Shown piece after piece: positions 4,071 through 58,831 of a DNA stretch of 64,000 nucleotides. Within the stretch, counting starts at the first letter, position 1; each line of letters starts with the position of its first letter. The stretch comes from Mantamonas sphyraenae STR306 (Eukaryota; Protista; CRuMs). Under the pieces are notes generated by a model. The model ran no database searches, was not told the DNA's origin, and saw only the letters and a program-made list of their open reading frames with translations. Both the position numbers and the translations under genes were made by a program. The stretch spans positions 1 through 64,000 of the forward strand of contig JAPMXV010000050.1 in NCBI GenBank assembly GCA_026936335.1. Reading direction: 5' to 3'.

Positions 4071-4645
4071 ACCCCCCCCCCCTCCCCCCCTGATGATGGG
4101 GTGATGGAGGTGGACACCCGCACCCGAACCCAGCGCCACTGCGTCCAAATGATTCCGGTGCTGCTGACGCCTACGCGTATGCGCCCAAAAGACCCTAAAG
4201 AGGTGGTGTCTGCGCTACGTGAGATTGCCACGCACGTGCAAACGCGTGAGTTCCGCACTACCGAGGGCACCGGATGGGGTATGAGCACACAACGACGTGC
4301 GGACGAAGAAAGTGGAGGAGTTTGACATCAGCGGCGGCGTGTGTGTGTGGGTTCCTGATCCGAGATCATCATTGTTGTTTTTGCCGATAACCCTCGCGTG
4401 CCTCATTGAAGTCATTCCCAGCGAAATCAACCGTTGGGAAAACCCCGTCAAGGAGCCGGAGCACGGAATTGTGGACACCAGGCTGCTGGCCGTCGTGCAG
4501 GTCCCACCCAAAACCGACACGGTATCCATTGCCAAGCATCAGAGTGTGCAAAAGCAGTGGCTTCGTTGCGTGCTATGAAGGGGAAACGAGTATCTTCCTG
4601 ACCACGCCCTGCCCACCCAACAAAAACGCGGCTCGCCTGCTTGTC

Positions 4646-37386: not shown

Positions 37387-38223
37387 ATGTCCAGCAGCGA
37401 AAACAACGCCGGTGTCGTGAAGCAGGGTGCCGAAGGCGTGCGTTGTGGTGTTTTTGTTTCCTCGCCCTCTCCCCTCTCTATTCCCCGTGGCCTGGTTGCT
37501 TCGCCACTCACCTTGTCTCCACCCGCGTCCTCGCAGCGCCTCTATGCAGGCACCTTTCTCGGAAAGGATGTCATGGTCAAGGAGCGCTTCCGCAAGGCCT
37601 ACCGGCTGAAGGAACTCGACGACAAGATCACCGAACGCCGCCTCGTCTGGGAGGCCCGCTACATGGTCCGTTGCCGCTCCCTGGGCATCGATGCGCCCAC
37701 CGTCCTCTTTGTGGACAAGAAGAACGCCAAATTGTACATGGAAAAGGTGGATGGCGACACCACCAAGGCCTTTTTCTATGCCCACCAGGACGACGCCGGA
37801 GACTACGACGACTACGCCCTCACCCTGTGCAATCACATCGGCCGCCAGGTCGCAGCCCTCCACAACGAATCCCTCGTCCACGGCGACCTCACCACCTCCA
37901 ATATGATGCTCCGTGCGGACAACGTCGTGCCACCGGCGGATTCAGACCCAATTGTCTCCGACGACCAACCCACCGCAGAGGACTGGTGCCCCAGCCTCGT
38001 TTTCATCGACTTTGGCCTCTCTGTCCACTCTGGCTCTGCCGAGGACAAGGCCGTCGACCTCTATGTCCTTGAGCGTGCCTTTGCCTCCACACACTCCAAG
38101 TCCAAAGTCCTCGTGGCCGCACTCCTCAAGGCCTACTTTGATGCCTGCCTCGACTCCTCCGCCGTCTCGGAACGCCTCAAGGATGTCCGTGCGCGAGGAC
38201 GCAAGCGCACCATGGTTGGATGA
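37387..38223 (+). CDS. BUD32: KEOPS complex kinase Bud32/TP53RK (PRPK)
   Basis: KQGAEG; KERFRKAYR; HGDLTTSN; FIDFGLS; [14 protein letters not shown]; C-terminal RGRKRTMVG; intron 37438-37536. Confidence 0.95.
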
Positions 38224-38278
38224 GCAAATGCAAACCACGATCGCCCGCTCCGACACAAACCTTTCTTTGTCGCTTCCC

Positions 38279-40847
38279 ATGTCGTCGTCCTCCTCGTCTT
38301 CCTCTGCCTCCTCTGCGGCAGCGGACCAGGAGACCATCATCATCGGCGCCTCCCGCAAACGCAAGTATACCGAGGTGCAGCTCGACCAGGAGAACAAACT
38401 GGAGATCCGTCCGCTTGGTGCAGGCCAAGAGGTCGGCCGCTCTTGCGTCGTCCTCAAGTTCAAGGGCAAAACAATCATGTTTGACTGCGGCGTCCACCCG
38501 GGTCTTTCGGGCATCAACGCCCTCCCCTATTTTGACGAGATTGAACCGTCCGAGATCGACCTCCTCCTCATCACCCATTTCCATCTCGACCACTGCGCCG
38601 GTGTCCCCTACCTGCTCGAGCGTGTCAGTTGTCATCTCTCCGTCCCGTGCCCTCACCCTCCCTTTCTGCCTCATTCCTCATGGCCCCTTCCCGTGCCACG
38701 TCGACACCTGGCTCCCGAGCTGCGCATTTTCCGCGGCGCCTGTGGCCACCCGCATACACCACGCGCCCCGTCCTCTTTGCCGTCCATGTCCTCCATACAC
38801 TGTGTGTACACCGCTCACGCGTCCTCGTGGCCCTTCCCCTGTGCTGCCATGTCCTTTCGGCGCTCTTTGTTTCCCAACACCCTGCCCAACCCGCAGACCG
38901 ACGGCTTTGACGCGCCCGTGTACATGACCCATCCGACGCGCGCCATCTTCAAGATGCTCCTCACAGACTATGTTCGCGTCAGGTGAGTGCAGCCCACAGC
39001 GAGTGCCCACACCATGTCTCCCCTGTGCATCGAGGGTCGCATTTCGCTGACGTGACGCTCTCTTCCCCCGCAGCAATTCCTCCCTGTACGACGAGAATGA
39101 CGTCGTGCGCGCAAACGAAAAGATCCAAACGATCAACTTTCACCAGCAGCTGGAACACAAAGGCGTCAAGTTCACCTGCTTCAACGCTGGCCATGTGCTC
39201 GGCGCAGCCATGTTCCAGATTGAAATTGCCGGCGTCAAGATCCTGTACACAGGCGACTTTTCCTGCGAAGAGGACCGTCACCTTATGCCTGCCGAGATTC
39301 CTCCCACCAAGCCCGACGTGGCCATCATCGAGTCCACCTACGGCGTACAGTGCCACGAACCGCGTGCCGAGCGTGAGAAGCGCTTCACAGGCGCTGTCTA
39401 CAAGACGGTGCGCCAGGGCGGACGCTGTCTCATTCCAGTGTTTGCTCTGGGACGTGCACAGGAACTCCTGCTCATTTTGGATGAGTTTTGGGAGGCCCAC
39501 CCGGAGATTCAGCATGTGCCTGTGTTTTACGCCTCCAGCATTGCCAAGAAGTGCATGACGATCTACCAGACCTATGTCAACATGATGAACGAACGCATCC
39601 GCAAGCAGATTGCGGTGAATAATCCATTCAAGTTCAAACACATCAGCAACTTGAAGAGCATCGACGACTTTGCCGACCAGGGTCCGTCCGTCGTCATGGC
39701 CTCGCCAGGCATGCTTCAGTCGGGCCTGTCGCGCGAGCTGTTTGAGCTGTGGTGTCCATACAGCAAAAACACCTGCCTGCTGCCCGGCTACTGTGTGGAT
39801 GGCACGCTGGCAAAACACATCATGAACGAGCCCAACCAGATCACCACACAGGCCGGTGACACCATCGACCTCAAGATGGATGTGCAGTACATCTCCTTCA
39901 GTGCCCACACAGACTTTGACGGCACACGCGCCTTTCTCGAGGCACTGCGTCCGCCACACATTGTGCTGGTGCACGGCGAGGCCAACGAAATGGAGCGTCT
40001 CAAAAGCAAGTTGGAGGAGATCTACGAGGAAGAGGGGCGCGAATCGGTGTTGTATTCGCCACGCAACTGCCATGCCGTCGAATTGATGTTTCAGGGTGAG
40101 AAGCGGGCCAAAACGGTGGGCACGCTTGCGGCCAAACCGCCGAAGCAAGGCGCGCGGCTCAGCGGCGTGCTTGTGCAAAAGGACTACAAGTACACGTTGA
40201 TCAGCACCGAGGAGCTGCAGCAATACACCAAGCTCAAGGTGACCAGCGTGCGCCAGAAGCAGCGCGTGCCCTTTACGCAGGAGCTGGACATGCTGCAGTG
40301 GCATCTGGGCAACCTGTACGCCGAGGTGGACATGCACAAGGACGGCTCGGGCATTAGCATCTTTGACGTGGTGCACCTCAAGGCCAACTCGGAAGGCACC
40401 GAGTTGGAAATGAGCTGGTATGCCAACGACGTGCACGACATGCTGGCCGACGCCGTGTTGGCCGTCATCCTCCAGTTGGAAGCAGACCCGGACAGCATGA
40501 TGGAGGTGTTTGAGCAGGAAACGCAGGCCTCCATCTCCACAGACGTGACCATGTACAACATGCTGCGCCTTCTGCGCGGCCAGTTTGCACGTGTGGACAT
40601 GAACCTAAAGGCGCGCACGCTGGACGTCAGCGGCGGCGACGGAGGCGGCGTCACTGTCACTGTCGGCCAATATCATGCAGAAATCACCGAGAGCAGCGAC
40701 GAGGAGCTGGCCAAGCGCGTCGCCGCCACCCTGGCTCACGCCAACGTTGTACTCTACCCGCTGCAGCGCACTTCGGGCCGTGCAGGCGACAACGACGACG
40801 ATGATGAGGTTGAACAAGTGGCTGTTGATGACGACGACGACGCGCCA

Positions 40848-40895
<48 letters not shown>

Positions 40896-41033
40896 GACGG
40901 GGCGGCAGCCAAACAAGAACTGGAAGTGGAGTCGGGTTCTGCATCCTCCTCTTCCTCCTCCTCCTCCTCCTCCGGTCGCAAGAAGGAAGAGCTGGTCATC
41001 AAAGAGGAAGACATCATGAACATCGAATCGTGA
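38279..41033 (+). CDS. CPSF3: Cleavage and polyadenylation specificity factor 73 kDa subunit (Ysh1)
   Basis: [12 protein letters not shown]; THFHLDH; [10 protein letters not shown]; YTGDFS.EEDRHL; [12 protein letters not shown]; SFSAH; LVHGE; introns 38624-38896 and 38983-39073. Confidence 0.96.
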
Positions 41034-41343: not shown

Positions 41344-41813
41344 TTGTCGGCCATAGAGGCGTTGTGTGTGTGTGGATCGTCAGAGCCGGGCAAGTAGAGA
41401 CTGGTGGTGTTGTCGATCTTCCTCCCTCGTCGTGACTGGGTGTCGAGCGTCGGTTCGCCTAAATGCAGTAAAGCCCCTCCTCACTCCGTTGTTCCTTGCA
41501 AAAAGTCCTCCTTGGTTGGGTTCCCCACCGTGCAAAAGCCACGCGCGAGACGTGACGAGACGCAGATGGAAACAGCCCATGCTCCACAGCACGCCCGTGC
41601 ATGGGTGTCACATTGCCACACACGTGGCACCCAGGTTTCACCTGGGCACACGCGAGAGCAGACACTCAGCAGCGCGGTGGAGAGGGTGGTCCTCTGGCCG
41701 CCGCGTATCGTGCAGCTGGCCAGCAGGGTGGGAAACGACGTCGGCAGCGCCAAGTGCCGGCCGTGTGTGCTGTGTACTCGACACATCACACACACGGGCC
41801 ACATTCACCCTGT

Positions 41814-44800
41814 TTAGGGCTTCTTGGGCGCCGGCTTCTTCGGGGCGGGCTTGCCCTCGTTGCCACAGGTGTGGCACTTCATCATCTTGTGCAGCTTGTT
41901 CCAGCGCTTCTGGAAGAGCGAGATCTGGCGGGAAGCGGCCCAGATGTGGCGGCGGATGCGCTTGGTGATGCGATCCACCTTGGTCTCCTTCTTGGCGGCA
42001 ATCTCACGCAGGTACTTGGCAAACGACTTGCTCATGTAGGCGAGGTAGCGCGACTGGTACACGGAGCGCTTGCAGGCCAGGGGCAGGTGGTTGAGCACGC
42101 GACGCAGGCAAGAGCGCTGCGGCGCAGGGGTCTTCCAGTAGCAACGCGAGTAGATGCGCGGCGCGGGCAGGTGGATGCCAGCCACGACGCCGCAGCGGCC
42201 CTTGCGCACGCACGGCAGACGGCTGCGCTTGAGACGCAGACGGCGACGCAGAAGAGCCATCTTGCGCAGGAGCACACGGAGCTTGAGGGTGCTCTGCTTC
42301 TTGAACATGCGCATGCGACGCAGGTCCTTGAGGGTCTTGAGGCGCTTCTGGTTGCAGGGCAGCTGTCGGCGACGCACGTAGGCGCGCCACAGCTTGGCCT
42401 TGAGGGACTTGAACTTGCCCTGCATGGCCTTGCGTGCCTGGCCGCTCATGCGAGCAATGAGCACGCGGTAAGCGCGCAGGTGGCTCTTCATGCGGTCGAT
42501 CTTGACACAGTAGTTGGCGTGCTTCTTGAAGCAGCGGCTGGTCTTCTTGCGACGCTGCAGCAGATGGCGCTTGGCCAGCTTCAGGGCACGCAGACGGCGA
42601 CGCAGTCGCTTGAGCGTGTTCTTCTTGCTGGCGTTGGCAGCACGCTTGGCGGCAGCCACGGCACGCGCAGACTTGCGCTTGGCCAGCGTCTTCTTGACAC
42701 GGCGGCTCTCCTCGTCGCTGTCAAACAGACGCGCCTTGGTGATGGAAGCCTTGGCCTGGCAGGCGCTGAGCGATTCGCGCAGGGTCTGCAGCGAATCCTT
42801 GTAGTTCTCGGCCAGGATGACAAAGCGGTCGCCACGGAAGAAGCGCTTCTTGTGCTTCTGACCACAACGAGCGCGTGCGTGGTGCATGCGACGGTTCCAC
42901 ATGCGCTTGGCCATGGCGCGGTCCAGCTTGCGCAGGCGGTTGTACTTGTTGCGAGCCTGGCGCGTCTTGCGGGCCAGGTTGAAGCGAGCGCGACCCTTGG
43001 CGTGGTTGCGCTTGTACAGCAGCGTGTGGAAGGTGTTGAGGGCAGCGGTGAGCTGGCGGGTGACCCAGTCGTGGCGCCACTTGTTGTACTCCACCACCGA
43101 GCACTGGTACAGCTTCTTGGCGTTGGCGTGCTTGGCAAACTGCTTGAAGCACTTGTGACGGTTCACACGACGCGGCTTGTACTCCAGCATCTTGATGATG
43201 CGGTTGCCACCCTTGCGCAGGTACTTGGCATCGCGGCGGCGCTTGGCCAGCTGGCGCTTCCTGGCCGCAATGACCATGGCCGGTGTCAGCTCGCCCGCAG
43301 GCAGGCCAGGGATCGGCGACTCGCGGTGCTCCGTCGGGTTCTTCTTGCGAAGGATGCGGCGCAGCTTGCGACGCACCGCACGCTGGGCACGCGCCTTGCG
43401 GCCACGCGGGCGACGGCGACGACGACGGCGGCGGTTCTTGCGACCCTTGCGACCCTTGCGACCCTTGCGACCCTTGCGGATGGCACGGCGCAGACGGCGC
43501 TTGGCACGACGCACCACACGCTTGCCCAGCGTCTTGCGGGCACGACGGATGACACGGCGCACGCGACGGCCGATGCGCACGCGGACACGACGGACAGGGC
43601 GGCGCAGAACCTTGCGGGCCTTGCGCACGTGGCGACGTCCCTTGCGCACCGCCTTGCGGACAAAGCGGATGGCACGGCGGAAGCGCTTACCGAAGCGGAT
43701 CTTGCGACGCAGCTTGCGCACCAGGCGACGAGCCACGTTGCGACGACGCACACGCAGGCGCAGCTTGCGCACCTTGCGCACCAGGCGCAGGGCACGAGCG
43801 AAGCGCATACGACGACGCACCACACGGCGGGCCTTGCGGACAACCTTGCGGACGAAGCGGCCACGACGACGCACCACACGGCGGGCCTTGCGGACAACCT
43901 TGCGGACGAAGCGACCACGACGACGCACCACACGGCGGGCCTTGCGGACAACCTTGCGGACGAAGCGACCACGACGACGCACCACACGGCGGGCCTTGCG
44001 GACAACCTTGCGGACGAAGCGGCGACGCACCACACGACGCAGGATCGGGCGACGGCGCACCACACGACGCACACGGCGGACCACACGACGCAGGATCGGG
44101 CGACGACGCACCACACGACGCACACGGCGGACCACACGACGCACACGACGCACACGGCGGCGAACGCGGCGGAAGATGCGACGGAAACGACGGCGGAAAC
44201 GCTTCTCCTCGTCGTACACATCGATGCTCTCGGGCTCATCGGCCTCCTCGTCGCTCTCGATGTCATCGGTGTCACGCACAGTGCGCTTGCAGTTGTTGTA
44301 CGAGCGCTTGTAGGCCAGATGCCACTCGCGCGCAATGTCGCGCTTGTTGCGAGCGTTCTTGGCCTGGTAGCGGCGGATGCTGGCAGCCACACGCTTGCAG
44401 GCGGCGGTCTGACGGGCATGGGCCTGCTGCAGGTTGTGACGCAGGTTGTGCAGGCGCAGAGTGATCTGGCCCACCTTTTCGTCACCGGCAGCGTTGCGGG
44501 AAGCAATCCACTTTTGCACCTTGGCCAGACGTGCCATGGTGCCCTTGATCATGGCTGCCACGCTGGCGCAGTTGCGACGGTTGCTGTCGCGCTTGCACTT
44601 GAGGGCAGCACGCTTGGCCAGCAGGCTGCGCTTCACCTTTTGCAGTTCGCGGCGTGCACGAACCATCTTGTCCCATTGTGTGGCCTCCTTCTTGCTCAGC
44701 TTCTGCCCGTTCCTGGCTCCGCTGATCTGCTTCTTGCAGCGCACACGCAGTGCTGTCAGGCGCTTCCACACGGCACGTGCACGGTTGCGCAGCGTGCGGC

Positions 44801-47800
44801 GGCGGCGAGCCACCGACGACGAGCACTTGTTCTTGCGCGTGGTCAGGCAGCTGATGGCACGGCGCTTCTCCAGCAGGGCGCGGCGCTGGGCCACCAGACG
44901 CTCCTCACGGGCGGCACACGTGCGGCGCAGACGCTCCACGCGGCCGTTGGATGCCAGGCGACGCTCCAGAGCAGCACGCTGGGCCTTGAGGCGACGCACC
45001 GTCTTGTGCACCTCACTCTGCGAGTGGCGGTTGAGCTTGTCGGCAAACAGAGCCTTCCACGACTCGTTGTACTTCTTGCATGCCACCTTGCGCTTGGCCA
45101 CGAGGCGCTTGCGCAGGTTGGCCAGACGCTTGAGCATGGCAGCCAGGCGACCGTAGTACAGCTTCCAGTCGTACTCGCGCACGCAGTGCTTCTTCATCAT
45201 CACCTTGTACTTGCAGCGGCGGCAACCCATGCCGATGTACTGGCGGTGGATGCGACGGAACAGATACAGCGAGGATCGCAGCAGGAACACGGCGTACTTG
45301 TGCGTGGTACCACAGCGGATCTGCTGGCCATACTTGTCCAGCAGCACCTTGGTCGTGCGGTACACCTTGTACACCTGCTGACGGATCAGCTTCATAAACT
45401 CGCAGATGCGCTGCGGGCGGTAGGTAGCCTCCATCGCCGTCTCCTTCTTGCGCTGGCGGTTCCACCAGCGGTCTGTGCGCTGCATGCAACGCTTCACGCC
45501 ACGGCGGAACTTGGTGGCGGTCGTGTCCATCCACAGGCCACGGCGCGGCTTCCAGTTGCACGGGAAGTGCTTCTTGCCACGGCTCAGCACCAGACGCAGG
45601 TTCTTGGGCAGAGTCTTCTTGGCACCCGGGCGCTTCGTGCACGCCGTAGCGAACCAACGGCGCCAGATCAGAGTGCGGCTGACCACAAAGCGGGCCCAGC
45701 TGTTGCGGAGCTGGCACCACACGCGCGCCACACCGCCACGCTTCTTGCACTGCACACGCTTCAGAGCCGCAGAGCGACGCAGCAGGCGTGCCAGGGCGGC
45801 CTGGTTGTTGCGCATACGGCGCATGTTGCGCAAAAAGACGCGCTTCCACACACCCAGCTGACGCGTCACCTTGACGATGAAGCGGCGCATCTGGGACATG
45901 GTGCGACGACGCAAGGCGCGACGACGGATGCAGTTGTAGTAACGGCAGCCAGCCAGGTGCTTCTTGTGCAGGTAGCGCTTGTAGCAGAACGAGGCAATGC
46001 TCTTGCCGGCCATCTTGCGGTAAGCACGAGCCTTGCGCAGGCAGCTGGCGTGGCGAGCACGACGCTGACGGATGCGCTGGATGGCCTCACGCAGCAGGCC
46101 CTGGTAGCCGTCGTACACGCAGTTGTAGTAGCGCACGTACAGGCGCTGGTGGGCGCATGCCTTCTTGACACGAGCACGGCGACCGGCGTTCTTGATGCGA
46201 GCCAGGATCTGGTTGGCACGCACCAGCCACACCTTGCTGTTGCCACGGTTGCCGATGCCACGCGAGCAGATGCCCACAGCACCGGTGGCCAGGTTCTCCG
46301 GAGCATACACGTACACGTTGTAGTAGCCGGCAGTGTGGCGCTTGTTGCGGCCACTGCCAACGTACACGTACTGCAGGGTGACGCGGATGCCACCGCCCAG
46401 CTTCAGAGTCTTGTTGCCACGGTTGCCCTTACGCACCATGCGCAGGTGGGCCGGACCCGAGTAGCGGCCGTGCTGGTTGTAACGCGCGGTGCGACCACGG
46501 CGGGTGCGCACAATCACCTCCGAGTTGAGGCCACGGTTGCCCCAGGCGCGGCCGTAGCGCACATGAGTCTGCACAGTGACACCACCGGCCTTGAACAGAG
46601 TCATCACGCCCGTCTTGCCGTAGATGTCAAACGAGCGGCCAAAGAACGAGCGGTAGTGCGGGTCGCCCGTGGCACGGCACGTGAGGATACGTGCACGCGG
46701 CAGCGGCTTGCGGCGAGCCACGCGGCGCTTGCGACGGCGCTGCAGGGCCAGCTGACCACGCACCTGGTTGCGGATGCACAGCAGATAACGCCTGCTGTGG
46801 ACGCCACCACGGCGGCCACGGCCGTATCGATGACGGCAGTACTTGACAATCGTGTTGCGTGCACGGCCATGCACCTGACGCAGCAGCTTGGCCACTGCGC
46901 GTGCGTTGCGTGCACGTGCGGCACGGCGGCGAAGGACCACCTTGCGAGCAATGGCGGCCAGGCGACCTCCGGCGTCGGCGATGCAGTCGTAGTAGCGAGC
47001 AGCCACACGGATGTGGCGGCAGGTGCGCTTGGCAACACGACGACGCTTGGCAGGCATCTTGGCCAGCAGACGGCCGGCCTTGACACGCCACGAGCGGTCG
47101 TTGCCCTTGCGGCCCATGCCGGATGTGCACAGACCAGTGCCCTGGAATGCCACACGCTCGCGCGTGGTCACCGTCACGTTGTAGTAGCCGTGGCCACGCG
47201 ACTTGCCATACCAGATGTTGATGCGCACGCGACGGCCAGCAGCCCACAGCGTCAGCTTGCGCGAACGCAGGCGACGAGCAGTGGCGGTGATGCGACCGTT
47301 GGTGGCAAAGGTGGCGGTGTGCTTGCCATGGCGCACAATCACGGCGCGGTTGAGGCCACGGCGACCGTGCCAGCGCATGTAACCCACACGCGTGATGATC
47401 TTGAGACCACGCACGGCAAACAGCACCAGGCTGCCCGTCTTGTTGTACACGTCAAAGCGACGTCCAAAGAACGAGCGGTAGTGCGGGTCGCCCGAAGACG
47501 TGCACGTCACCATGCGCGACTTCTTCACACGACGGGCCTTGGCCACACGGCGACGGATGCATGCCAGGTAGCGGGCACCCTGCGTGCGACGGTAGCGCTT
47601 GCGGCACAGACGCACAATGCCACTGCGGGTGCGTGCAGGCACGTGGCGCAGCAGCGAAGCAATCTGCTTGGCACGGCGTGCGCGCAGAGCCTTGGCACGG
47701 CGGCGTGCGGCCAACAGAGCCTTGCGCATGCCGTGGGCCGCGTCAAACAGACAGTCGTAGCGGCGGGCGGCGTTGTTGCGGTGGCGGCGACAGGCGCGGA

Positions 47801-50800
47801 CGATGCGACGGCGCTGGGCGCGGTTGCGGATCGACGCCACGACGGCGGCGGCCTTGCGCTTCCAGTAGGCGGCGTTGGCCACACGGTGACCAATGCCACT
47901 GGTGCAGTCGCCCTGGGCGCGAGTGGCCACGTCACCACGCGTGTTGACATACACGTTGTAGTAGCCCTTGGCGTATCCACGGCGGTTCTCCCACTGGTAG
48001 CGGGTGTCCACGCGCACCTTGCGTCCGTCCTTGGTGCGCACAGTGAGCACCTTGCGGAAGGAGCGGCGGCCCTGGCGGCGGATGCCACCGCAGAAGCCAC
48101 CAAAGCCTCGGCACTCGCCGAAGCGGCCAAAGGTGACGGTGCGACCCTGGACGCGAACCTGCACGTGGGTGATCACCGAGTTGGTGCCACGACCGTGGCT
48201 GTAAGCCAGGTGCGTGCGCACAAGCACACCCGACACACTCAGCAGCGTGCGCCACTTGCGGTTCACGCGGTAAATGTTAAAGGTGCGGCCCCAGAAGGAG
48301 CGGTAGTGCGGGTCGCCCGTGGCGCGGCAAGCCATGTTGCGCTTCAGGTGCTTCGGTGCAGGCACGGGCTTCTTCACGCGGCGCACATACGAACGCACAC
48401 ACAGGAAGTAGCGCGAGGCATGCAGGCGGCCCTTGCGAGTGTAGCGCACACGGCAGTACTTGGCGGCCTTGGCGCGGTGGGCGCGCGAGAGGCGACGCAG
48501 CCATGCGGCAGCGGCCTGCAGCGCACGGCGACGGCGGTTGCGACGTGCAGCAATCTGGCGCTTGGCAGCCGACTTGAGTCCCTCCATGTAGTCGTAGAGG
48601 CAGTTGTAGCGGCGAGCCTTGGTGCTCTGGCGCTTGCACACGCGCAGGGCACGGGCACGCTGGCCACGGCCCATCTTGCGCAGCACGGCGGCGGCGCGGA
48701 AGGCCCAGATGCGGTCGTTGGCACCGGCACCACGGCCAGAGGCACACAGACCGGAAGACTGGAGCGCCACGTCGTTGCGAGAGTACACGTAGACGTTGTA
48801 GTAGCCTGTGGTGTGGTTGCGGTTCCTGCCACGTCCGACGTGGTTGTACTGCAACAGCACGCGCACGTGACGTCCACGCACGGTGAAGTTGAGGGTGCGG
48901 CTGCCGCGACCACGGCGGGTGGTCAGACGGTAGGCCTTGGGGCCAGCGTAGCCGCCGTTCTGGTTGTACGTAGCCTTGCGGCCGGCCCAGACGATCTCCA
49001 CGCGGGAGTTGAGGCCACGGTTGCGCCAGGCGCGGCCGTAGCGAACAATGGTGTCCACACGCAGGGCGCCGTACTTGAACAGCGTCATGCGGCCCGTCTT
49101 TCCGTAGATGTCAAAGCGACGGCCGTGGAAGGAACGGTAGTGCGGGTCGCCTGTGGAGGCACACGTCACACGCTTGCTCAGGTGACGCGGCGTACGCTTG
49201 GCCAGCACACGCTTGACCGCAGCACGCACACACAAAAAGTAGCGGTGGGCCTTGCGGGCCAGCGGGTAGCTGCGGCCACACGAGCGCACAATGGCGCCAC
49301 GTGCACGCGCAGGCAGCTTGCGCAGCCAGGCGTTGGCAGCACGGCGCTTGGCAGCCACAAGGTGGCGGCGACGACGAGCAGCTGCAGCCGCAGCCTTGCG
49401 CATGCGGTGCAGATAGTCGTAGAGGCAGTTGTAGCGACGTGCAGCGTTGCCCTGACGGCGGCAGGCACGCACAGCGGCGTTGCGCTTGCGGCGCGGGGTG
49501 CGACGCAGCAGGTTGTTCACCTTGCGCTTCCAGTACGGCTCGTTGCCGCGATGACCCTGCGACACCGAGCAGGCACCCGAGGCCTGCACAGCCACCTGCG
49601 TGCGCGTGTAGATGTGCACGTTGTAGTAGCCGTTGGTGAAGTGGCGGTTGCGTCGTGCAGCCTTACCAGAGCGCACACGCACGTACTGCAAGTTGACCTG
49701 CACGCGATGGCCACGCGCCGTAAAGACCAGGCTGCGAGAGCCACGGCCGCGACGCACAGTCATGCGGTAGGCACGGTTGCCGCTGTAGCCACCGTTGTGG
49801 TTGTACAGCGCCACGCGGCGGCCGTTGCGCACAATGGTCACGCGCGAGTTGAGGCCGCGGTTGCGCCAGGCATGGCCGTAGCGAAGGTGGGTCTTCACCA
49901 CCAGTCCGCCAAAGTTGAACAGGGTCACGTTGCCCTGCTTGCCGTAAATGTCGTAACGGCGGCCGAAAAAGGTGCGGTAGTGCGGATCACCTGTGGAGGC
50001 GCACGTCACACGGCGGCTCAGGTTACCCGGGGCCACGTTGCGCTTGCGCACCTGCACAGCCACCTGCGCACGCACGCAGCGGTAATACTGAGTCGGGTTG
50101 CCACGCTTGCGGTTGCACACGCGAGCCACGGCACGACGGCCGGCGGCGTTGAGCTTGCGCAGCTGTGCAGTGGCCAGGCCAAACATGCGCTTGCGAAGGG
50201 CAGCGGCACGGCGGGCATGGAAGCCACGCACGTGCGAGCGAACGCACAGGTAGATGCGGTGGCCACGACCGCGGTAGCGACGACGGCACACGTTCATGTA
50301 CGAGCGACGCTGGCGAGCAGGCACACGACGCAGCAGCACCGACGCCTTGCGGGTCCACACGGCGTTGGCCTTGCGCTGGCGTGCCAGACGGGCAATGGCC
50401 GCGCGGCGCATGCCGTGCGATGCGTCGTACACGCAGTTGTAGAAGCGTGCGTTGTTGCCGCTGCGGCAGCGGCGCTTCAGGTAGCGACGCTGGTGGGCAG
50501 GCAGCTTGCTCAGGATGCGGTTGGCATGCGAGCGCCAGTAGCGTGCGTTGGCCACACGTCCAGCGCCACGGCCACAGTCGCCCGTGGCAGCCACACCGGC
50601 GGCGGCGCGAGCGCTCACCGACACGTTGTAGTAGGCACGCACAAAGCGACGGTTGCCGCCGTTGCTCACGCGGTGGCACGACAGACCCAGGCGCACCTGC
50701 TCACCCGTGTGGGTGCGGAAAGTGCGCTTGCGGCAGCCGGCTCCGCTGCAGCGGCAGTTGTTGTTCCAGTAAGCCACCTGGCGACCGTTCTCCTTGATCT

Positions 50801-52531
50801 GAACACGTGCGTTCAGGCCTCGGTTGCGCCAGTGGCGGCCGTACTGCACGTACGTGCGCACCTGCACACCCGAAAACGAGTACAGCGTACGCCAGCCCTG
50901 GAAGCCGTAGATGTCAAAGCGACGTCCAAAGAACGAGCGGTAGTGCGGATCACCGCCGCTTGAGCATGTCATGCGACGGCGCAGGCTACGCGGCACCGCA
51001 TCAGCCTCCTCGTCCGCCTCCTCGTCTTGCAGCATGCCACGACGACGACGGCGGCGGCGAATACGGCGACCACCACGGCGGCCACCTCGGCGGCCACGAC
51101 GACGACGACGACGCGGCACGGTGATGCAGCGACGGCGTGTCAGCCAGAAGCGCCAGCTAGCCTGCTTGCGCTTGAAGAAGCGCGTAAAGTCTGCGGCGCG
51201 AGCCTTCTGCCAGCGCTTGTACAGACGGCGCACATAGGCAATGGTCTGCTTGCGGTTCTGCGACAGCTTGCACATGCTTGCAGACTTGGCACATGCCTTG
51301 CCGGCGTTCAGGTCCGACGACAGCTGTGCGTTGTGTTGCGCACGCAGTTCAGCCCACGTCGGCACGCTCACCGCAGAGCGGCTGCGATCGAACGAGCGAT
51401 AGCAGAACTTGGGTCCGCGGAAGCGCTTGAGGATGGCACGCTCCTGCGCGGCCTCGATGCGTGCCTGCTTGCGGAACTTGAGCATGATGTTGGCCACATC
51501 GTTGAACGAATACTGCAGCAGTCGCTTCTGCGTGTAGCGGAAGCATCGCGCGAACCGGTTCTTGTACAGCTGGTTGCTGCGCGCAGCAGGAAGCTTGTCG
51601 CTGAACTTCATCAGCACACGTCTGTTTGTCGCAAAGCCCCAAACGCGCCGCGCCGCACGGAAAACCACAGCGTTTTTTCCCAACCGCAAACAAACGCCAA
51701 AACATCGGCCCCACGCACATGTCCCCAATCCGTGTCAGCCTCCACACACATCTCTACGCCTGCGCCTCCTCGCCACCTTCCTGCACATCTCCTCCTCAAC
51801 CCGCGGCCGCCCTCATGCCGCCGCCTGCGCAGCCTCAACACTCCTTCGGCACGATGCTCCCGCTCCTCGCCGGAAATGCACGCCCCCCGTTTTTCCAACC
51901 TACCGCTTGCTCAGGGGCTCCACAAACAGCTTCTTGCATGTCTTTGACGGCTGCGTGATCTGTTCGTCGTCAAGGACCTGTGCGTATCCACACGTGTCAG
52001 CCTCCTGCCTTGTACGACCGCCGCGAGCTCGCCGCAACTCTACGATTTCCCTCTTCCCTTCTTTTCGCCCTTGCGCCCCTGCGCCGCCCACCTACCTCCT
52101 GCAGCGAGCCATACGGCGCCGAAGAGTCCTCGACAGCCTCGTCGGAGCTCGAGGCGTCCTCCACATCGGTAGAGCTGTGTGTGTGTGTGCCGTCCTCCCT
52201 CGTGTCAGCCCTCTGCCGTTCCATCCAAGAGGGAACGTAGCCTTTTTCACTCACCTTGCCAATTCCTCCGTGTCCTCCACAGACATGCCCATTACGGGCG
52301 TCGTGTCCATGGCATCCACCTGTGTGTGTCCCGTGTCAGCTACGCCTCCCTGCCGCCCTTCCGCCCGCTGCGTCCGGCCCTCGCGAAAAACAAGCCTGGT
52401 GTTTTTTCGCCCCGCCCGCGATTATCGTGCCCCTCCGCTCTCGCCCCGCGCGTCCCACGCCCGCTTTCACAACTCACAAAGCTGGCGGCTCCGACCAAAA
52501 AGAGCAGCAGAATAAGAATTCCGTGTTTCAT
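41814..52531 (-). CDS. Giant (~3359 aa) secreted Arg/Lys-rich protein with six GDPH-containing VWD/C8-like repeats and polybasic repeat blocks
   Basis: Exons 52531-52478, 52319-52255, 52174-52096, 51977-51904 and 51621-41814 join in frame with GT-AG introns; signal peptide MKHGILILLLFLVGAASFVDA; six C..(T/S/G)GDPHYR(S/T)F.GR repeats; strong codon bias. Confidence 0.85.
43808..44160 (-). repeat. Coding tandem repeats: 54-bp unit (GRFVRKVVRKARRVVRRR) about x4 and 51-bp unit (RPILRRVVRRVRRVVRR) about x2
   Basis: Repeated cgacgacgcaccacacggcgggccttgcggacaaccttgcggacgaagcg and aggatcgggcgacg units. Confidence 0.9.
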
Positions 52532-55146: not shown

Positions 55147-58100
55147 ATGTCGGCGGAATCCATTCTTGCCCTCCTCGACGAGTCTGAGCAAGAGCTCAAG
55201 GTCTATGCCCTGCGCAAGATCAACGACATCGTCGATGTCTCCTGGGCCGAGGTGGCCGACTATGTCGACGACATGTATGTTTTGCCGTCCGTGGCAGACC
55301 CTCCTGCTTCTGCCTTTGCCTCCCTCGTCCCCCTTTCCGGCCCTCTCGTCACTGTCGATCCCGCTGACCCGTCCCGTCTCCGCCGCTATGGCCTCTTCCC
55401 ATCCCCGTTCGCCTGTCACCGCAGTGGTGCACTGTCCGAAGACTCGGATTTCCAGCACAACAAGCTGGCTGCCCTCGTTGCTGCCAAGGTCTGTGCCCGT
55501 TTTCAGGCTCCCCGCGCGCGCGCCAACCACCGCGCGTCCGATTCCGGCAGCTCCGCTCACACCCCCTGTGCTCACACGCCGTCCACTTACGTCCGCAGGT
55601 CTATTACCATCTCGGTGCATACAACGAGGCCTGCTCCTACGCCCTCCTTGCGGGCGACCAGTTTGACGTCACGGAGCGCTCCCAGTTTGTCGAGACGGTG
55701 ATCTGTGCGTTGTGCCAATTCCTCCCGCGTTTCCGTCGCCTCGCCCACCTCCCGCCTCCACACCGTCCTCTCCACACCCACATGTGCCCGCCATCCTCCT
55801 GCATACGTCATCGTGCTCCTCCCTTGCCCATTCCACGCCTCGGAAATGCCCAGACACACGCCGTGGCGCCCCCGTTCCAGTCTCGGCCGAACGCCGCCAA
55901 AAACCGAGCGCGTGGAGAATGCCATCCGCAGCAGCCGGCCCTTTCGACGCTCCCCGCTTGCCATCATCACACGCTGACACAACGTCCTCCCACTCCCTAA
56001 CATTGTCCATTCGCACTCCGCGCACCCGGCATCCTTGCGCAGCCAACTGCATCGACTCGTACATCGAGAAGCAGGTGGAAAATGCCGAAGCTGCGCTGCG
56101 CCACAAGCTGCTCGAGGAACAGGGCGACGAGCCGCCGCGTGAACTCGTGCTTGCAGAAATCGACCCCAACCTCGAGCAGGTGGTGGAACGCATGTTCCAG
56201 CGCTGTTTCGACGACGGAGAGTTCAAGCAGCCCATCGGCATTGCCCTTGAGGCACGCCGTTTGGACATTCTGGAAAAGGCCATTGCCCTCGCAGGCGAAG
56301 CCAGCGGAGACGCACAGGCCACCGTCTCCGAGTACCTGTCGTACACATACACCCTGTGTGTCACCAACGTCGTCGGCTCCCGAGAGTTTCGCCAAAGCAT
56401 CATGCGCTACCTTGTGCGCAAGTACCAGAGTCTCGAGGTGCCCGACTACGTCAACATGTGCCAGTGCCTCGTCTACCTCGACGACCCGTCCACCGTTGCC
56501 TCCACCCTCGTTTCCCTCCTCAAGAGTGGCTCCGAGGGCGACGAGCTCCTCGCCTACCAGATCGCCTTTGATTTGTGCGACACAGCAACCCAGAAATTCA
56601 CCATCAGCATCCGCGAAAACCTGCCTTCGCCCGCTGCCAGCAGCAGCAGCAGCAACAGCAGCAACAGCGAAGGTGATGACGCCCAGCAGGAGGACACAGA
56701 CAACGCCGAGTTTGCCGCTCGTCTCAAGAAGCTAGACATGATCCTGCAGGGCGAGACCTCGATCAATCTCTACCTCTCCTTCCTGTGCCGCAACAACAAC
56801 ACGGACATCCGCATCATGAACAACACCAAGGACGCACTCGAGGTGAAGAACTCGGTGCTCAACCTGGCCGCCATCTTGTGCAACGGCATCATGCACAGCG
56901 GCACCACCGTGGACACTTTTCTGCGCAAGAACATGCAGTGGCTGTCTCGCTGCAAGAAGTGGGCCCAGTTCTCCGCCGTAGCCTCGCTGGGCATCATCCA
57001 CTATGGCCACATGAGCGAAGGCCAAAAGGTGCTCCAGCCATACCTGCCCGGAGGCGCCAACACGGGCGGACCTGGCTCCCCGTACAGTGAGGGCGGCTCT
57101 CTGTACGCCGTGGGCCTCATGCACGCCAACCATAGCCGTCCGGACACCATCGACTACATGTGCACGCAGCTGCAGGCTGCCGCGGGACGCGAGCCCGTCA
57201 TCCACGGCGCCTGCCTGGGCCTCGGCGCAGCCGCCATGGCCACAGGCAACCAGGGTGTGGTCAACCAGCTGCGTGATATCCTGCACAGCAACGACGCAGT
57301 GGCGGGCGAGGCCGCAGCCCTGGCCATCGGTTTGGTCATGGTGGGCACAGCCGACGAGCTCACCCTGAACGACTTTCTGGGCACCGCACACAACACCGAG
57401 CACGAAAAGATCATCCGCGCCATCGGCATGGCCTTTGCCATGATCAACTACGGCCGTGAGGAGGAGGCCGACGTGATGATCGAGCAGCTCAGCAGCGACA
57501 AGGACCCCCTGCTGCGCTTTGGAGGCATGTACACCATTGCCATGGCGTACTGCGGCACACGCAACAACAAGGCCCTCCGCAAGCTGCTGCACTTTGCCGT
57601 CAGCGATGTCAACGACGACGTGCGCCGCGCCGCCGTTACAGCCATCGGCTTCTTGCTCTTCCGCGAGCCCCAAATGTGCCCCAAATTTGTGTCGCTGTTG
57701 GCCAAGTCGTACAACCCGCACGTGCGCCACGGCGCAGCCACCGCACTGGGCATTGCTTGCGCAGGCACAGGCCTCAAGGAGGCGCTGGACATTCTGGAGC
57801 AGCTCACCGAAGACCAGAGCGACTTTGTGCGCCAGGGCGCACTCATCTCCATGGCCATGATCCTGATGCAGCAGAACGAGAAGCAGGAGCCGCGCGTGAA
57901 AAAGGTGCGCGAGATGTACGCCTCGATCATCGCCAACAAGCGCGAGCCAACCATGGCCAAGCTGGGTGCCATTCTGGCCACAGGCATCATCGATGCAGGC
58001 GGACGCAACGTGACCATCAGTCTGCTCACACGCACGGGCCACAAGAACATGGAAGCCATTGTCGGCCTGGCCCTATTCACCCAATTCTGGTACTGGTATC

Positions 58101-58831
58101 CGCTCACGCACTTTATCAGCATGGCCTTTTCGCCCACCGCGCTCATTGGCTTGAACAAAGACCTGCAGGTGCCCAAGATGGAGTTTACCTCCAACGCCGC
58201 ACCCTCCATGTTTGCGTACCCGGAGCCCATCAAGGCACCGGAGAACAACAAGAAGGAAAAGAAGGGCAAAGCCGTGCTGAGCTTCACAAACAAGGCACGC
58301 AATCAGGACGGCTCACTGGCGTCTGCAAACACCCTGCGCAACGCCCTGACCGAGGAGGAGGAGCCCAAGGACGACGACAAGACAAGCGCAGCCGGTGACA
58401 AGACCGACGCCATGGAGGAGGACGGCGTGGGTCCCACCGCAACTTCAGGCGCTGACGCAGACAAAGGAAAAGACAAGGCCGACGAGGAGAACGGCGAGGA
58501 CGACAAGGAGCAGGCAAACCAGGCGCAGGAGCAGGAGCCCCAGTTTGAGGTGCTGAACAACCCGTCGCGCGTTACCGTCAGCCAGCGCTCGGTGGTGCAA
58601 TTTAACGAAGGCCGCTACGAGCCGGCCGTGGAGGGATATGTGTTTGGCATCACCATGCTGCAGGACAACACCCCCGAGGAAAAAGTGGAGCTGGCAGATA
58701 TTGTCCTGGTCAAGGCCAATGGTGGCTCCAGCAGCAGCTCCAGCGGAAGTGCAGCTGCAGACGCCATGGAAGAGGATGAGGGCGAGGAGCCGCCGCCTCC
58801 CGAAGACTTTGACTACCCTGCCGCGTCGTGA
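55147..58831 (+). CDS. RPN2: 26S proteasome regulatory subunit Rpn2/PSMD1
   Basis: ILALLDE..ELKVYAL; SKV-like AAKVYYHLG; HSGTTVDTFLR; PC repeats HGACLGLG; AVSDVNDDVRRAAV; FWYWYPL; introns 55275-55424, 55489-55598, 55705-56042. Confidence 0.97.

What the first reader, a model, noticed from the sequence alone, without database searches (positions are those of the whole stretch)
41814..52531. Giant secreted, hyper-cationic polyprotein with six GDPH (autocleavage) VWD/C8-like modules
Seen in sequence: four short exons supply a signal peptide and an acidic pro-piece to a 9.8-kb exon. Six ~280-aa repeats (GDPH near 50950, 49985, 49145, 48310, 47485, 46660) each start C-x3-GDPHYR(S/T)F.GR.(F/Y)(D/N)(I/V)Y. 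Each continues through a YYNV.V strand and a G.C motif, then Cys-bearing helices (R.Y(N/D)C..D). Asp/Glu are rare and Arg/Lys dominate; long basic coiled-coil-like segments follow. Established knowledge: GDPH at the start of a VWD domain followed by C8 is the pattern of FCGBP, gel-forming mucins, tectorin and zonadhesin. The Asp-Pro bond self-cleaves, and the resulting anhydride has been proposed to cross-link covalently. Inference: this protist makes a self-processing, possibly polymerising, strongly polycationic secreted scaffold. Possible roles are an extrusome or adhesive, a bacteria-trapping net, or a cyst or coat matrix. I do not know of an equivalent described protein.
Basis: partly seen in the sequence, partly recalled or inferred. 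Interest (0 to 1): 0.92.

Follow-up and report, generated by a model that had tools for sequence, protein, structure and literature searches.

The report
Giant polycationic secreted VWD-repeat protein
A tiny gliding marine flagellate has a family of huge, extremely positively charged secreted proteins built from mucus-protein-like (VWD) domains; they probably act as an electrostatic glue or bacteria-binding material, and no description of them was found.

Summary
The gene is real. A five-exon model gives 3,359 aa with a signal peptide, net charge about +840 and six GDPH repeats. Each repeat has a predicted VWD fold (Z about 11 to MUC2/VWF; HMM hit to FCGBP, E 5e-19).

1. The helical part is not C8 but a 2-Cys, roughly 50-aa module that also repeats on its own.
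2. Every repeat keeps the cysteine pair that tethers the GDPH fragments in FCGBP, so self-cleavage should nick the chain, not release modules.
3. Anhydride cross-linking was looked for and not found in FCGBP.

Real fragmentation is more likely at acidic spacers beside polybasic sites, one of which precedes a strongly amphipathic Arg/Val tract. At least six related genes lie in this genome, two relatives are in the M. plastica transcriptome, and smaller cationic GDPH-VWD proteins occur in Naegleria. Best reading: an abundant electrostatic adhesive or bacteria-binding matrix (0.45). Main rival: an antibacterial precursor (0.3). The scan noted sister genes elsewhere in this genome. No RNA run was listed.

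The parts
52478..52531 (-). Exon 1: signal peptide (18 codons, hydrophobic core)
   Evidence: mean hydropathy 3.3 over 11 aa; judged by hydropathy only, no SignalP
52255..52319 (-). Exon 2: end of signal peptide and start of the acidic pro-piece (6 D/E, no K/R)
52096..52174 (-). Exon 3: acidic pro-piece (8 D/E), ends in LQE
51904..51977 (-). Exon 4: end of the acidic piece, switch to basic
41814..51621 (-). Exon 5 (9,808 nt): the rest of the protein and the TAA stop
   Evidence: phase-2 junction matches exon 4; AG-free zone upstream
51036..51620 (-). N-terminal basic region ending in a poly-Arg/Gly tract
50997..51032 (-). Acidic spacer 1 (LQDEE...), between polybasic runs; candidate processing site
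50013..50975 (-). Repeat 1: GDPH-VWD (Gly at 50954) plus three 2-Cys helical modules
49173..50012 (-). Repeat 2: GDPH-VWD (49991) plus two helical modules
48339..49172 (-). Repeat 3: GDPH-VWD (49151) plus two helical modules
47514..48338 (-). Repeat 4: GDPH-VWD (48317) plus two helical modules
46689..47513 (-). Repeat 5: GDPH-VWD (47492) plus two helical modules
45849..46688 (-). Repeat 6: GDPH-VWD (46667) plus one clear and one divergent helical module
45210..45422 (-). First half (helices 1-2, ends in CxxC) of a Mantamonas-specific four-helix bundle
44286..45173 (-). Long basic, probably helical segment; Cys spacing is near mirror-symmetric (residue sums 4586-4590), suggesting a disulfide-stapled hairpin rod
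   Evidence: helicity and pairing are inferred, not modelled
44199..44279 (-). Acidic spacer 2, ending in EEKR
43326..44204 (-). Arg/Val/Lys tract (56% K+R, no D/E); internally repeated and strongly amphipathic at 100 degrees
   Evidence: mean hydrophobic moment 0.68 vs 0.34 +/- 0.03 shuffled, z 10.4
42141..43313 (-). C-terminal basic region with one stand-alone helical module (about 43071-43232) and acidic spacer 3 (42705-42725)
41862..42113 (-). Second half (helices 3-4, ends in CxxC) of the four-helix bundle, about 1,000 aa after the first half
41601..50963 (+). Antisense 3,120-codon open frame: a by-product of codon bias, not a gene
   Evidence: the gene has 0 TTA, 0 CTA and 1 TCA codons; repeats vary most at third positions of the minus frame

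Best explanation
A highly expressed secreted precursor of about 396 kDa that forms a polycationic adhesive or binding material outside a gliding bacterivorous flagellate. Shown in sequence or by model: signal peptide, acidic pro-piece, six VWD domains each followed by 2-Cys helical modules, basic rods, an Arg/Val amphipathic tract and a split four-helix bundle. Inferred from FCGBP/RGM biochemistry: each VWD nicks itself at Asp-Pro in the secretory pathway and stays whole through the beta1-to-G.C disulfide, which stabilises the fold rather than releasing parts. Inferred: a kexin/furin-like protease cuts at the polybasic/acidic spacers; the cargo is packed with some polyanion, since its own acidic residues offset only about 14% of the positive ones; on release it binds anionic surfaces (substrate, biofilm, bacterial envelopes) multivalently, for gliding attachment or prey capture.
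For: VWD fold. GDPH and beta1 Cys in 38/38 copies and the partner Cys in 95%, at 39% mean identity. Tethering and stabilisation in FCGBP: PMC8267560, PMC10880436. Codon bias extreme against other long frames of the window (AAG 261/261, A3 2.6% vs 8-22%) and shared by paralogues. Signal-peptide-like first exons in six related genes. Relatives transcribed in M. plastica. Two P-domain convertase loci in the genome. GDPH proteins localise to diatom adhesive trails (bioRxiv 2023.03.06.531300). Mantamonas glides on surfaces and eats bacteria (PMC10492846). No transmembrane segment.
Against: No expression, localisation or cleavage data for this gene. No ultrastructure of Mantamonas is published (PMC12133344). 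The Arg/Val tract and the acidic-then-basic layout fit antimicrobial precursors at least as well. Cleavage sites cannot be picked from sequence (46 furin-like motifs). The Gln that assists cleavage in FCGBP D10 is Tyr here and the Asp seven residues after the scissile Asp is lost, so cleavage efficiency is uncertain. Sea-water ionic strength would screen simple charge attraction.
Confidence: 0.45

Rival explanations
1. Antibacterial or lytic precursor: the acidic pieces act like defensin pro-pieces, proteases free amphipathic cationic peptides (above all the Arg/Val tract) and cationic modules into food vacuoles or onto prey, and the VWD array is a carrier or agglutinin.
For: Arg/Val tract amphipathicity z 10.4, directly after an acidic spacer ending in KR. 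Acidic spacers recur next to polybasic runs in paralogues. Unchecked scan notes list many other acidic/cationic secreted genes in this genome. The host is a voracious bacterivore.
Against: Half of the protein is folded, disulfide-tethered VWD repeats whose average amphipathicity is no more than shuffled (z 1.2). No family or fold match to saposin-like or other lytic proteins for the parts tested. The acidic pieces are far too small to neutralise the charge.
Confidence: 0.3
2. One reading: the Asp-anhydride left by GDPH cleavage reacts with lysines or sugars, so six sites per chain cross-link a coat, cyst wall or extrusome lattice.
For: GDPH is invariant. The protein is rich in Lys (261) as potential acceptors. 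ITIH3 shows such chemistry exists (PMC8267560). The mature chain has an odd Cys count (85), so one intermolecular disulfide is possible.
Against: In the closest tested case, FCGBP, the anhydride was hydrolysed and no partner was found (PMC8267560). Repeat cysteines are all in even sets, leaving none for mucin-type polymerisation. No coat or cyst evidence was found for Mantamonas.
Confidence: 0.13
3. Intracellular polycation (protamine-like nucleic-acid binder or pellicle protein), or a mis-modelled or unexpressed gene.
For: Arg-rich tracts resemble protamines. No RNA run was listed. Several paralogues show frame breaks with no GCTGACA branch motif near them.
Against: Signal-peptide exons here and in six related genes, conserved Cys pairs, an extracellular fold, an unbroken 3,268-codon exon, and transcribed relatives in M. 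plastica, one with its own signal peptide.
Confidence: 0.05

Closest known systems
FCGBP (IgG Fc-binding protein)
   Same: Secreted giant with many tandem GDPH-VWD domains and the beta1 tether disulfide; the best solved-structure sequence hit (8rde, E 4.6e-19).
   Different: No C8, TIL or FCGBP_N domain. Each VWD has net charge +18 to +25 against about -4 to +6 in FCGBP-like domains. The Asp at +7 (42/42 in FCGBP-like repeats) is lost and Gln/Met at +14 is Tyr. Has acidic spacers, Arg tracts and helical rods.
Gel-forming mucins and VWF (D assemblies)
   Same: VWD fold (MUC2 D3 Z 11.3, rmsd 2.6 A over 119 residues); helices follow the VWD where C8 sits.
   Different: No PTS region (Ser+Thr 8.3%), no C8/TIL/E or cystine knot, and no spare Cys in the repeats.
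Repulsive guidance molecules (RGM_C: GDPH-VWD plus short 2-Cys helical hairpin)
   Same: GDPH-VWD outside a D assembly (RGMB Z 10.7), followed by a C...Y..C..D hairpin; related protist proteins match RGM_C positions 178-235 (P0009, E 7.7e-6).
   Different: RGMs are single-domain GPI-anchored ligands. The window's modules do not match RGM_C directly (weak) and are repeated independently.
Diatom GDPH-domain adhesive-trail proteins (e.g. Ac629)
   Same: Secreted GDPH proteins of a gliding protist, located in adhesive trails (bioRxiv 2023.03.06.531300).
   Different: The diatom trail proteins are described as PTS-rich. Homology beyond the GDPH-VWD core was not tested; only a weak Atlas lead to a diatom VWFD cluster (0.87).
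Uncharacterised Naegleria/Percolomonas and metatranscriptome GDPH-VWD proteins (XP_002671385.1, XP_044566319.1 and others)
   Same: Signal peptide, one or two GDPH-VWD domains with a 2-Cys hairpin, and in Naegleria long Lys/Arg/Ala tails.
   Different: Much smaller, VWD domains near neutral, separate branch in a quick tree; no paper in the library names the Naegleria accessions.

Membership tests
VWD domain superfamily | beta-sandwich VWD fold of about 140-160 aa | tested here: met
   AF2 pLDDT 81; 27 Foldseek hits with E<=0.001, nearly all mucin/VWF; VIA Z 10-11
VWD domain superfamily | Pfam PF00094 above the gathering cut-off | tested here: inconclusive
   21.3 bits vs 22.9 for the long exon; the M. 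plastica relative P0001 passes at 24.8
GDPH-cleaved VWD proteins | GDPH between strands 1 and 2 with Asp and His intact | tested here: met
   6/6 in the window, 38/38 in Mantamonas
GDPH-cleaved VWD proteins | actual Asp-Pro cleavage | not testable with these tools
   needs expression or N-terminomics
GDPH-cleaved VWD proteins | beta1 Cys and G.C Cys tether pair | tested here: met
   both Cys present in 6/6 and aligned with the FCGBP pair; the bond itself is inferred
FCGBP | VWD-C8-TIL units | tested here: not met
   2-Cys helical modules; no C8 or TIL hit
FCGBP | FCGBP_N domain | tested here: not met
   no Pfam hit at the N-terminus of the long exon
Gel-forming mucins | PTS domain and three N-terminal D assemblies | tested here: not met
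   Ser+Thr 8.3%, Pro 1.8%
Canonical Ca-binding VWD | Asp of the TFDG motif and the acidic loop after GLC | tested here: not met
   0/6 in the window vs 42/42 (Asp) in FCGBP-like repeats; that these bind calcium is from my own knowledge
RGM family | RGM_N plus RGM_C and a GPI anchor | tested here: not met
   no RGM hit for window repeats; the C-terminus is basic, not hydrophobic
Antimicrobial-peptide polyprotein | signal peptide, anionic pro-piece, convertase sites, amphipathic cationic units | tested here: inconclusive
   layout and amphipathicity met for one 293-aa tract only; activity untested

The most novel reading that the evidence does not exclude
Mantamonas has an undescribed secretory system: granule-stored giant polycations assembled from self-nicking, probably calcium-free VWD domains, a mobile 2-Cys helical module and amphipathic Arg tracts, released as a coacervate-like glue or net for gliding or for catching and killing bacteria, with possible anhydride cross-linking; a charge-based counterpart of mucus in a lineage sister to Amorphea.
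Probability: 0.3. Interest if true: 0.8.

Novelty: new variant of a known kind. Interest (0 to 1): 0.57.

Why it matters
Tandem GDPH-VWD giants were treated as an animal mucus design, and a survey saw protist VWDs only without C8/TIL (PMC4948705). This is an independent multi-VWD expansion in a CRuMs flagellate that uses extreme positive charge instead of O-glycan tracts. It supplies concrete candidates for the unknown adhesion or prey-capture machinery of gliding nanoflagellates. It also gives a natural test of why GDPH is conserved, which is still open (PMC10880436): 38 divergent copies keep it while most lose the neighbouring Asp and Gln. A folded, secretable, disulfide-held polycation could also interest adhesive and antimicrobial materials work.

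Tried and rejected
No RNA run was listed, so no reads were laid. Word-index homologue searches with the repeat profile, the bundle domain and the rod region found nothing new; the full HMMER scan did. The Atlas gave no hit for the bundle, and its fold matches only generic four-helix bundles. The plus-strand 3,120-codon frame was rejected as a gene. C8 was rejected as the helical module. Non-standard genetic codes are not needed. A resemblance of the Arg/Val tract to engineered lytic-base-unit peptides is from memory only; the paper was not held and a text search was blank. The tree is the quick version only. Paralogues with frame breaks were left in pieces.
Full report
OBSERVATION. The minus strand carries a stop-free frame of 3,306 codons, 51734-41817, between ordinary nuclear genes (CPSF73 and RPN2). 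Four short upstream exons have GT-AG ends and GCTGAC branch motifs. Their lengths (54, 65, 79 and 74 nt) put the 9,808-nt last exon in frame, giving 3,359 aa. The fourth intron's branch motif lies 112 nt before the acceptor with no AG in between. Exon 1 encodes a hydrophobic leader and exons 2-4 hold 18 acidic residues. The long exon has 967 Lys+Arg against 114 Asp+Glu and no transmembrane stretch, so the mature net charge is about +840. No RNA run was listed, so splicing is predicted, not observed.

ORGANISM. The assembly has 25,061,354 bases in 78 contigs, matching the Mantamonas sphyraenae assembly (25.06 Mb, 78 contigs; PMC10492846). The two best outside hits come from the M. plastica transcriptome. 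The identification rests on these two matches. Mantamonads are marine gliding bacterivores, and no ultrastructure was available as of 2025 (PMC12133344).

THE REPEAT. A profile of the six repeats hits mouse FCGBP (E 4.6e-19) and aligns both the Cys before GDPH and the G.C Cys with FCGBP's. The AlphaFold model of repeat 1 (pLDDT 81) has a beta domain at residues 1-140 that matches VWD domains of MUC2, VWF, MUC5 and RGMB (Z 10-11, rmsd 2.4-2.9 A over about 120 residues). Over 38 Mantamonas copies at 39% mean identity, GDPH and the preceding Cys are invariant and the partner Cys is in 95%. The copies were extracted by that motif, but the profile search of the genome showed no GDPH-less VWD copy. 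In FCGBP this Cys pair keeps the cleaved first strand attached, the anhydride was found hydrolysed, and cleavage raises protease resistance (PMC8267560; PMC10880436). So GDPH probably nicks each domain without releasing anything. Two positions differ from FCGBP-like repeats: the Asp seven residues after the scissile Asp (42/42 there, 0/6 here) and Gln/Met at +14, which is Tyr here. From my own knowledge the first is a calcium ligand. The second only partly affects cleavage in FCGBP D10.

THE HELICAL MODULE. What follows each VWD is not C8. It is a roughly 50-aa helical module with two Cys (C...Y..C), present 13 times in this protein and about 18 times in tandem in a gene on contig C2 that has no GDPH. 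Pfam C8 does not match. The equivalent hairpin in a related protist protein matches the end of RGM_C, so the module may be a reduced C8/RGM-type hairpin that became mobile. Direct profile support for that link is weak.

THE REST. A Cys-bearing domain shared with two paralogues on the same contig and with M. plastica P0001 is predicted as a four-helix bundle (pLDDT 89 for the P0001 version) with only generic matches and no other relatives. In the window gene its halves are about 1,000 aa apart. Between them lie a basic segment with near mirror-symmetric Cys spacing, an acidic spacer ending in EEKR, a 293-aa Arg/Val/Lys tract with very high helical amphipathicity (z 10.4), and further basic sequence. 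One paralogue has an acidic insert at the same split point. Acidic spacers, often starting with (V/L)QD after a basic run, recur through the family, and the genome has two P-domain convertase loci. These spacers, not GDPH, are the likelier true cut sites; that is inference.

FAMILY. Related genes lie at C50:71-84 kb, C50:124-134 kb, C43, C6, C59 and C2, each with a signal-peptide-like first exon. C60 has two more GDPH motifs that I could not fetch. All share extreme codon bias, the usual mark of high expression. That bias also explains the long antisense frame: the gene has almost no TTA, CTA or TCA codons, and repeats diverge most at third positions of the minus frame (0.47 vs 0.54 and 0.57). 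Outside Mantamonas, secreted GDPH-VWD proteins with basic tails occur in Naegleria gruberi and N. fowleri, a GDPH-VWD relative occurs in Percolomonas, and cationic ones occur in AT-rich, partly poly(A)-tailed contigs of unnamed organisms. A quick tree groups the Mantamonas cationic repeats with a few of the unnamed sequences (SH-aLRT 97), apart from animal FCGBP-like and Naegleria domains (the careful search did not finish).

MECHANISM. Most likely (0.45): an abundant secreted polycationic adhesive or binding matrix; VWDs self-nick and stay tethered, spacers are cut by a convertase, and the product binds anionic surfaces or bacteria. GDPH proteins in diatom adhesive trails are a precedent (bioRxiv 2023.03.06.531300). 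Rival (0.3): a precursor of antibacterial amphipathic peptides for food vacuoles or prey; the two roles could coexist. Covalent anhydride polymer: 0.13. Intracellular protein or artefact: 0.05. No step of function is shown; only anatomy, fold, conservation and transcription of relatives are.

VERDICT. Not a member of the FCGBP, mucin or RGM families, but built on their GDPH-VWD chemistry. It is a new variant with an unusual charge, a new mobile module and a lineage-level expansion. I found no description in the searchable literature. The scan had flagged sister genes in this genome; those notes are not independent evidence. Interest 0.57.

Noticed in passing
G000:C2:163006-172820 (L042, L043), minus strand: About 3,000-aa secreted cationic gene with about 18 tandem 2-Cys helical modules, Arg/Ala and GRK tracts, and no GDPH-VWD.
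   Followed up: partly
G000:C43:30775-38439 (L036, L037): The paralogue's first GDPH-VWD in this frame is interrupted by a roughly 150-aa insert of Arg/Ala plus two acidic blocks before its YYNV strand; the gene also ends in a canonical VWD that keeps the TFDG Asp.
   Followed up: partly
G000:C50 near 81050 and 82900-83400; C6 near 32400, 30500 and 28300; C43 near 38500: Paralogues show frame breaks with no GCTGACA branch motif nearby: assembly errors in repeats or decaying copies. Left unjoined.
   Followed up: partly
G000:C50:77051-79016: Three repeats of the C50 paralogue are almost identical in protein sequence, pointing to recent tandem amplification or conversion.
   Followed up: no
G000:C60:228759-230045; C31:393314-396120; C57:25544-31357: Further GDPH or VWD loci. 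C57 is not cationic. C60 and C31 were not fetched.
   Followed up: no
L053 (JGI 3300032540) 1-1105: Poly(A) AT-rich transcript with acidic N-region, cationic helices and GDPH-VWD; two in-frame TAA inside the acidic region hint at a TAA=Gln code, so the design may occur in another protist lineage.
   Followed up: no
P0033 (XP_002671385.1), P0068 (XP_044566319.1): Naegleria gruberi and N. fowleri have uncharacterised secreted GDPH-VWD proteins with long Lys/Arg/Ala tails; no paper in the library names them.
   Followed up: partly
window 37910-41030 (+) and 55712-58828 (+): Neighbours are CPSF73 and proteasome subunit RPN2: ordinary housekeeping context.
   Followed up: yes
window 51622-51903: Intron 4 has its branch motif 112 nt from the acceptor, against 15-29 nt in the other three introns, with an AG-free zone between.
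   Followed up: yes
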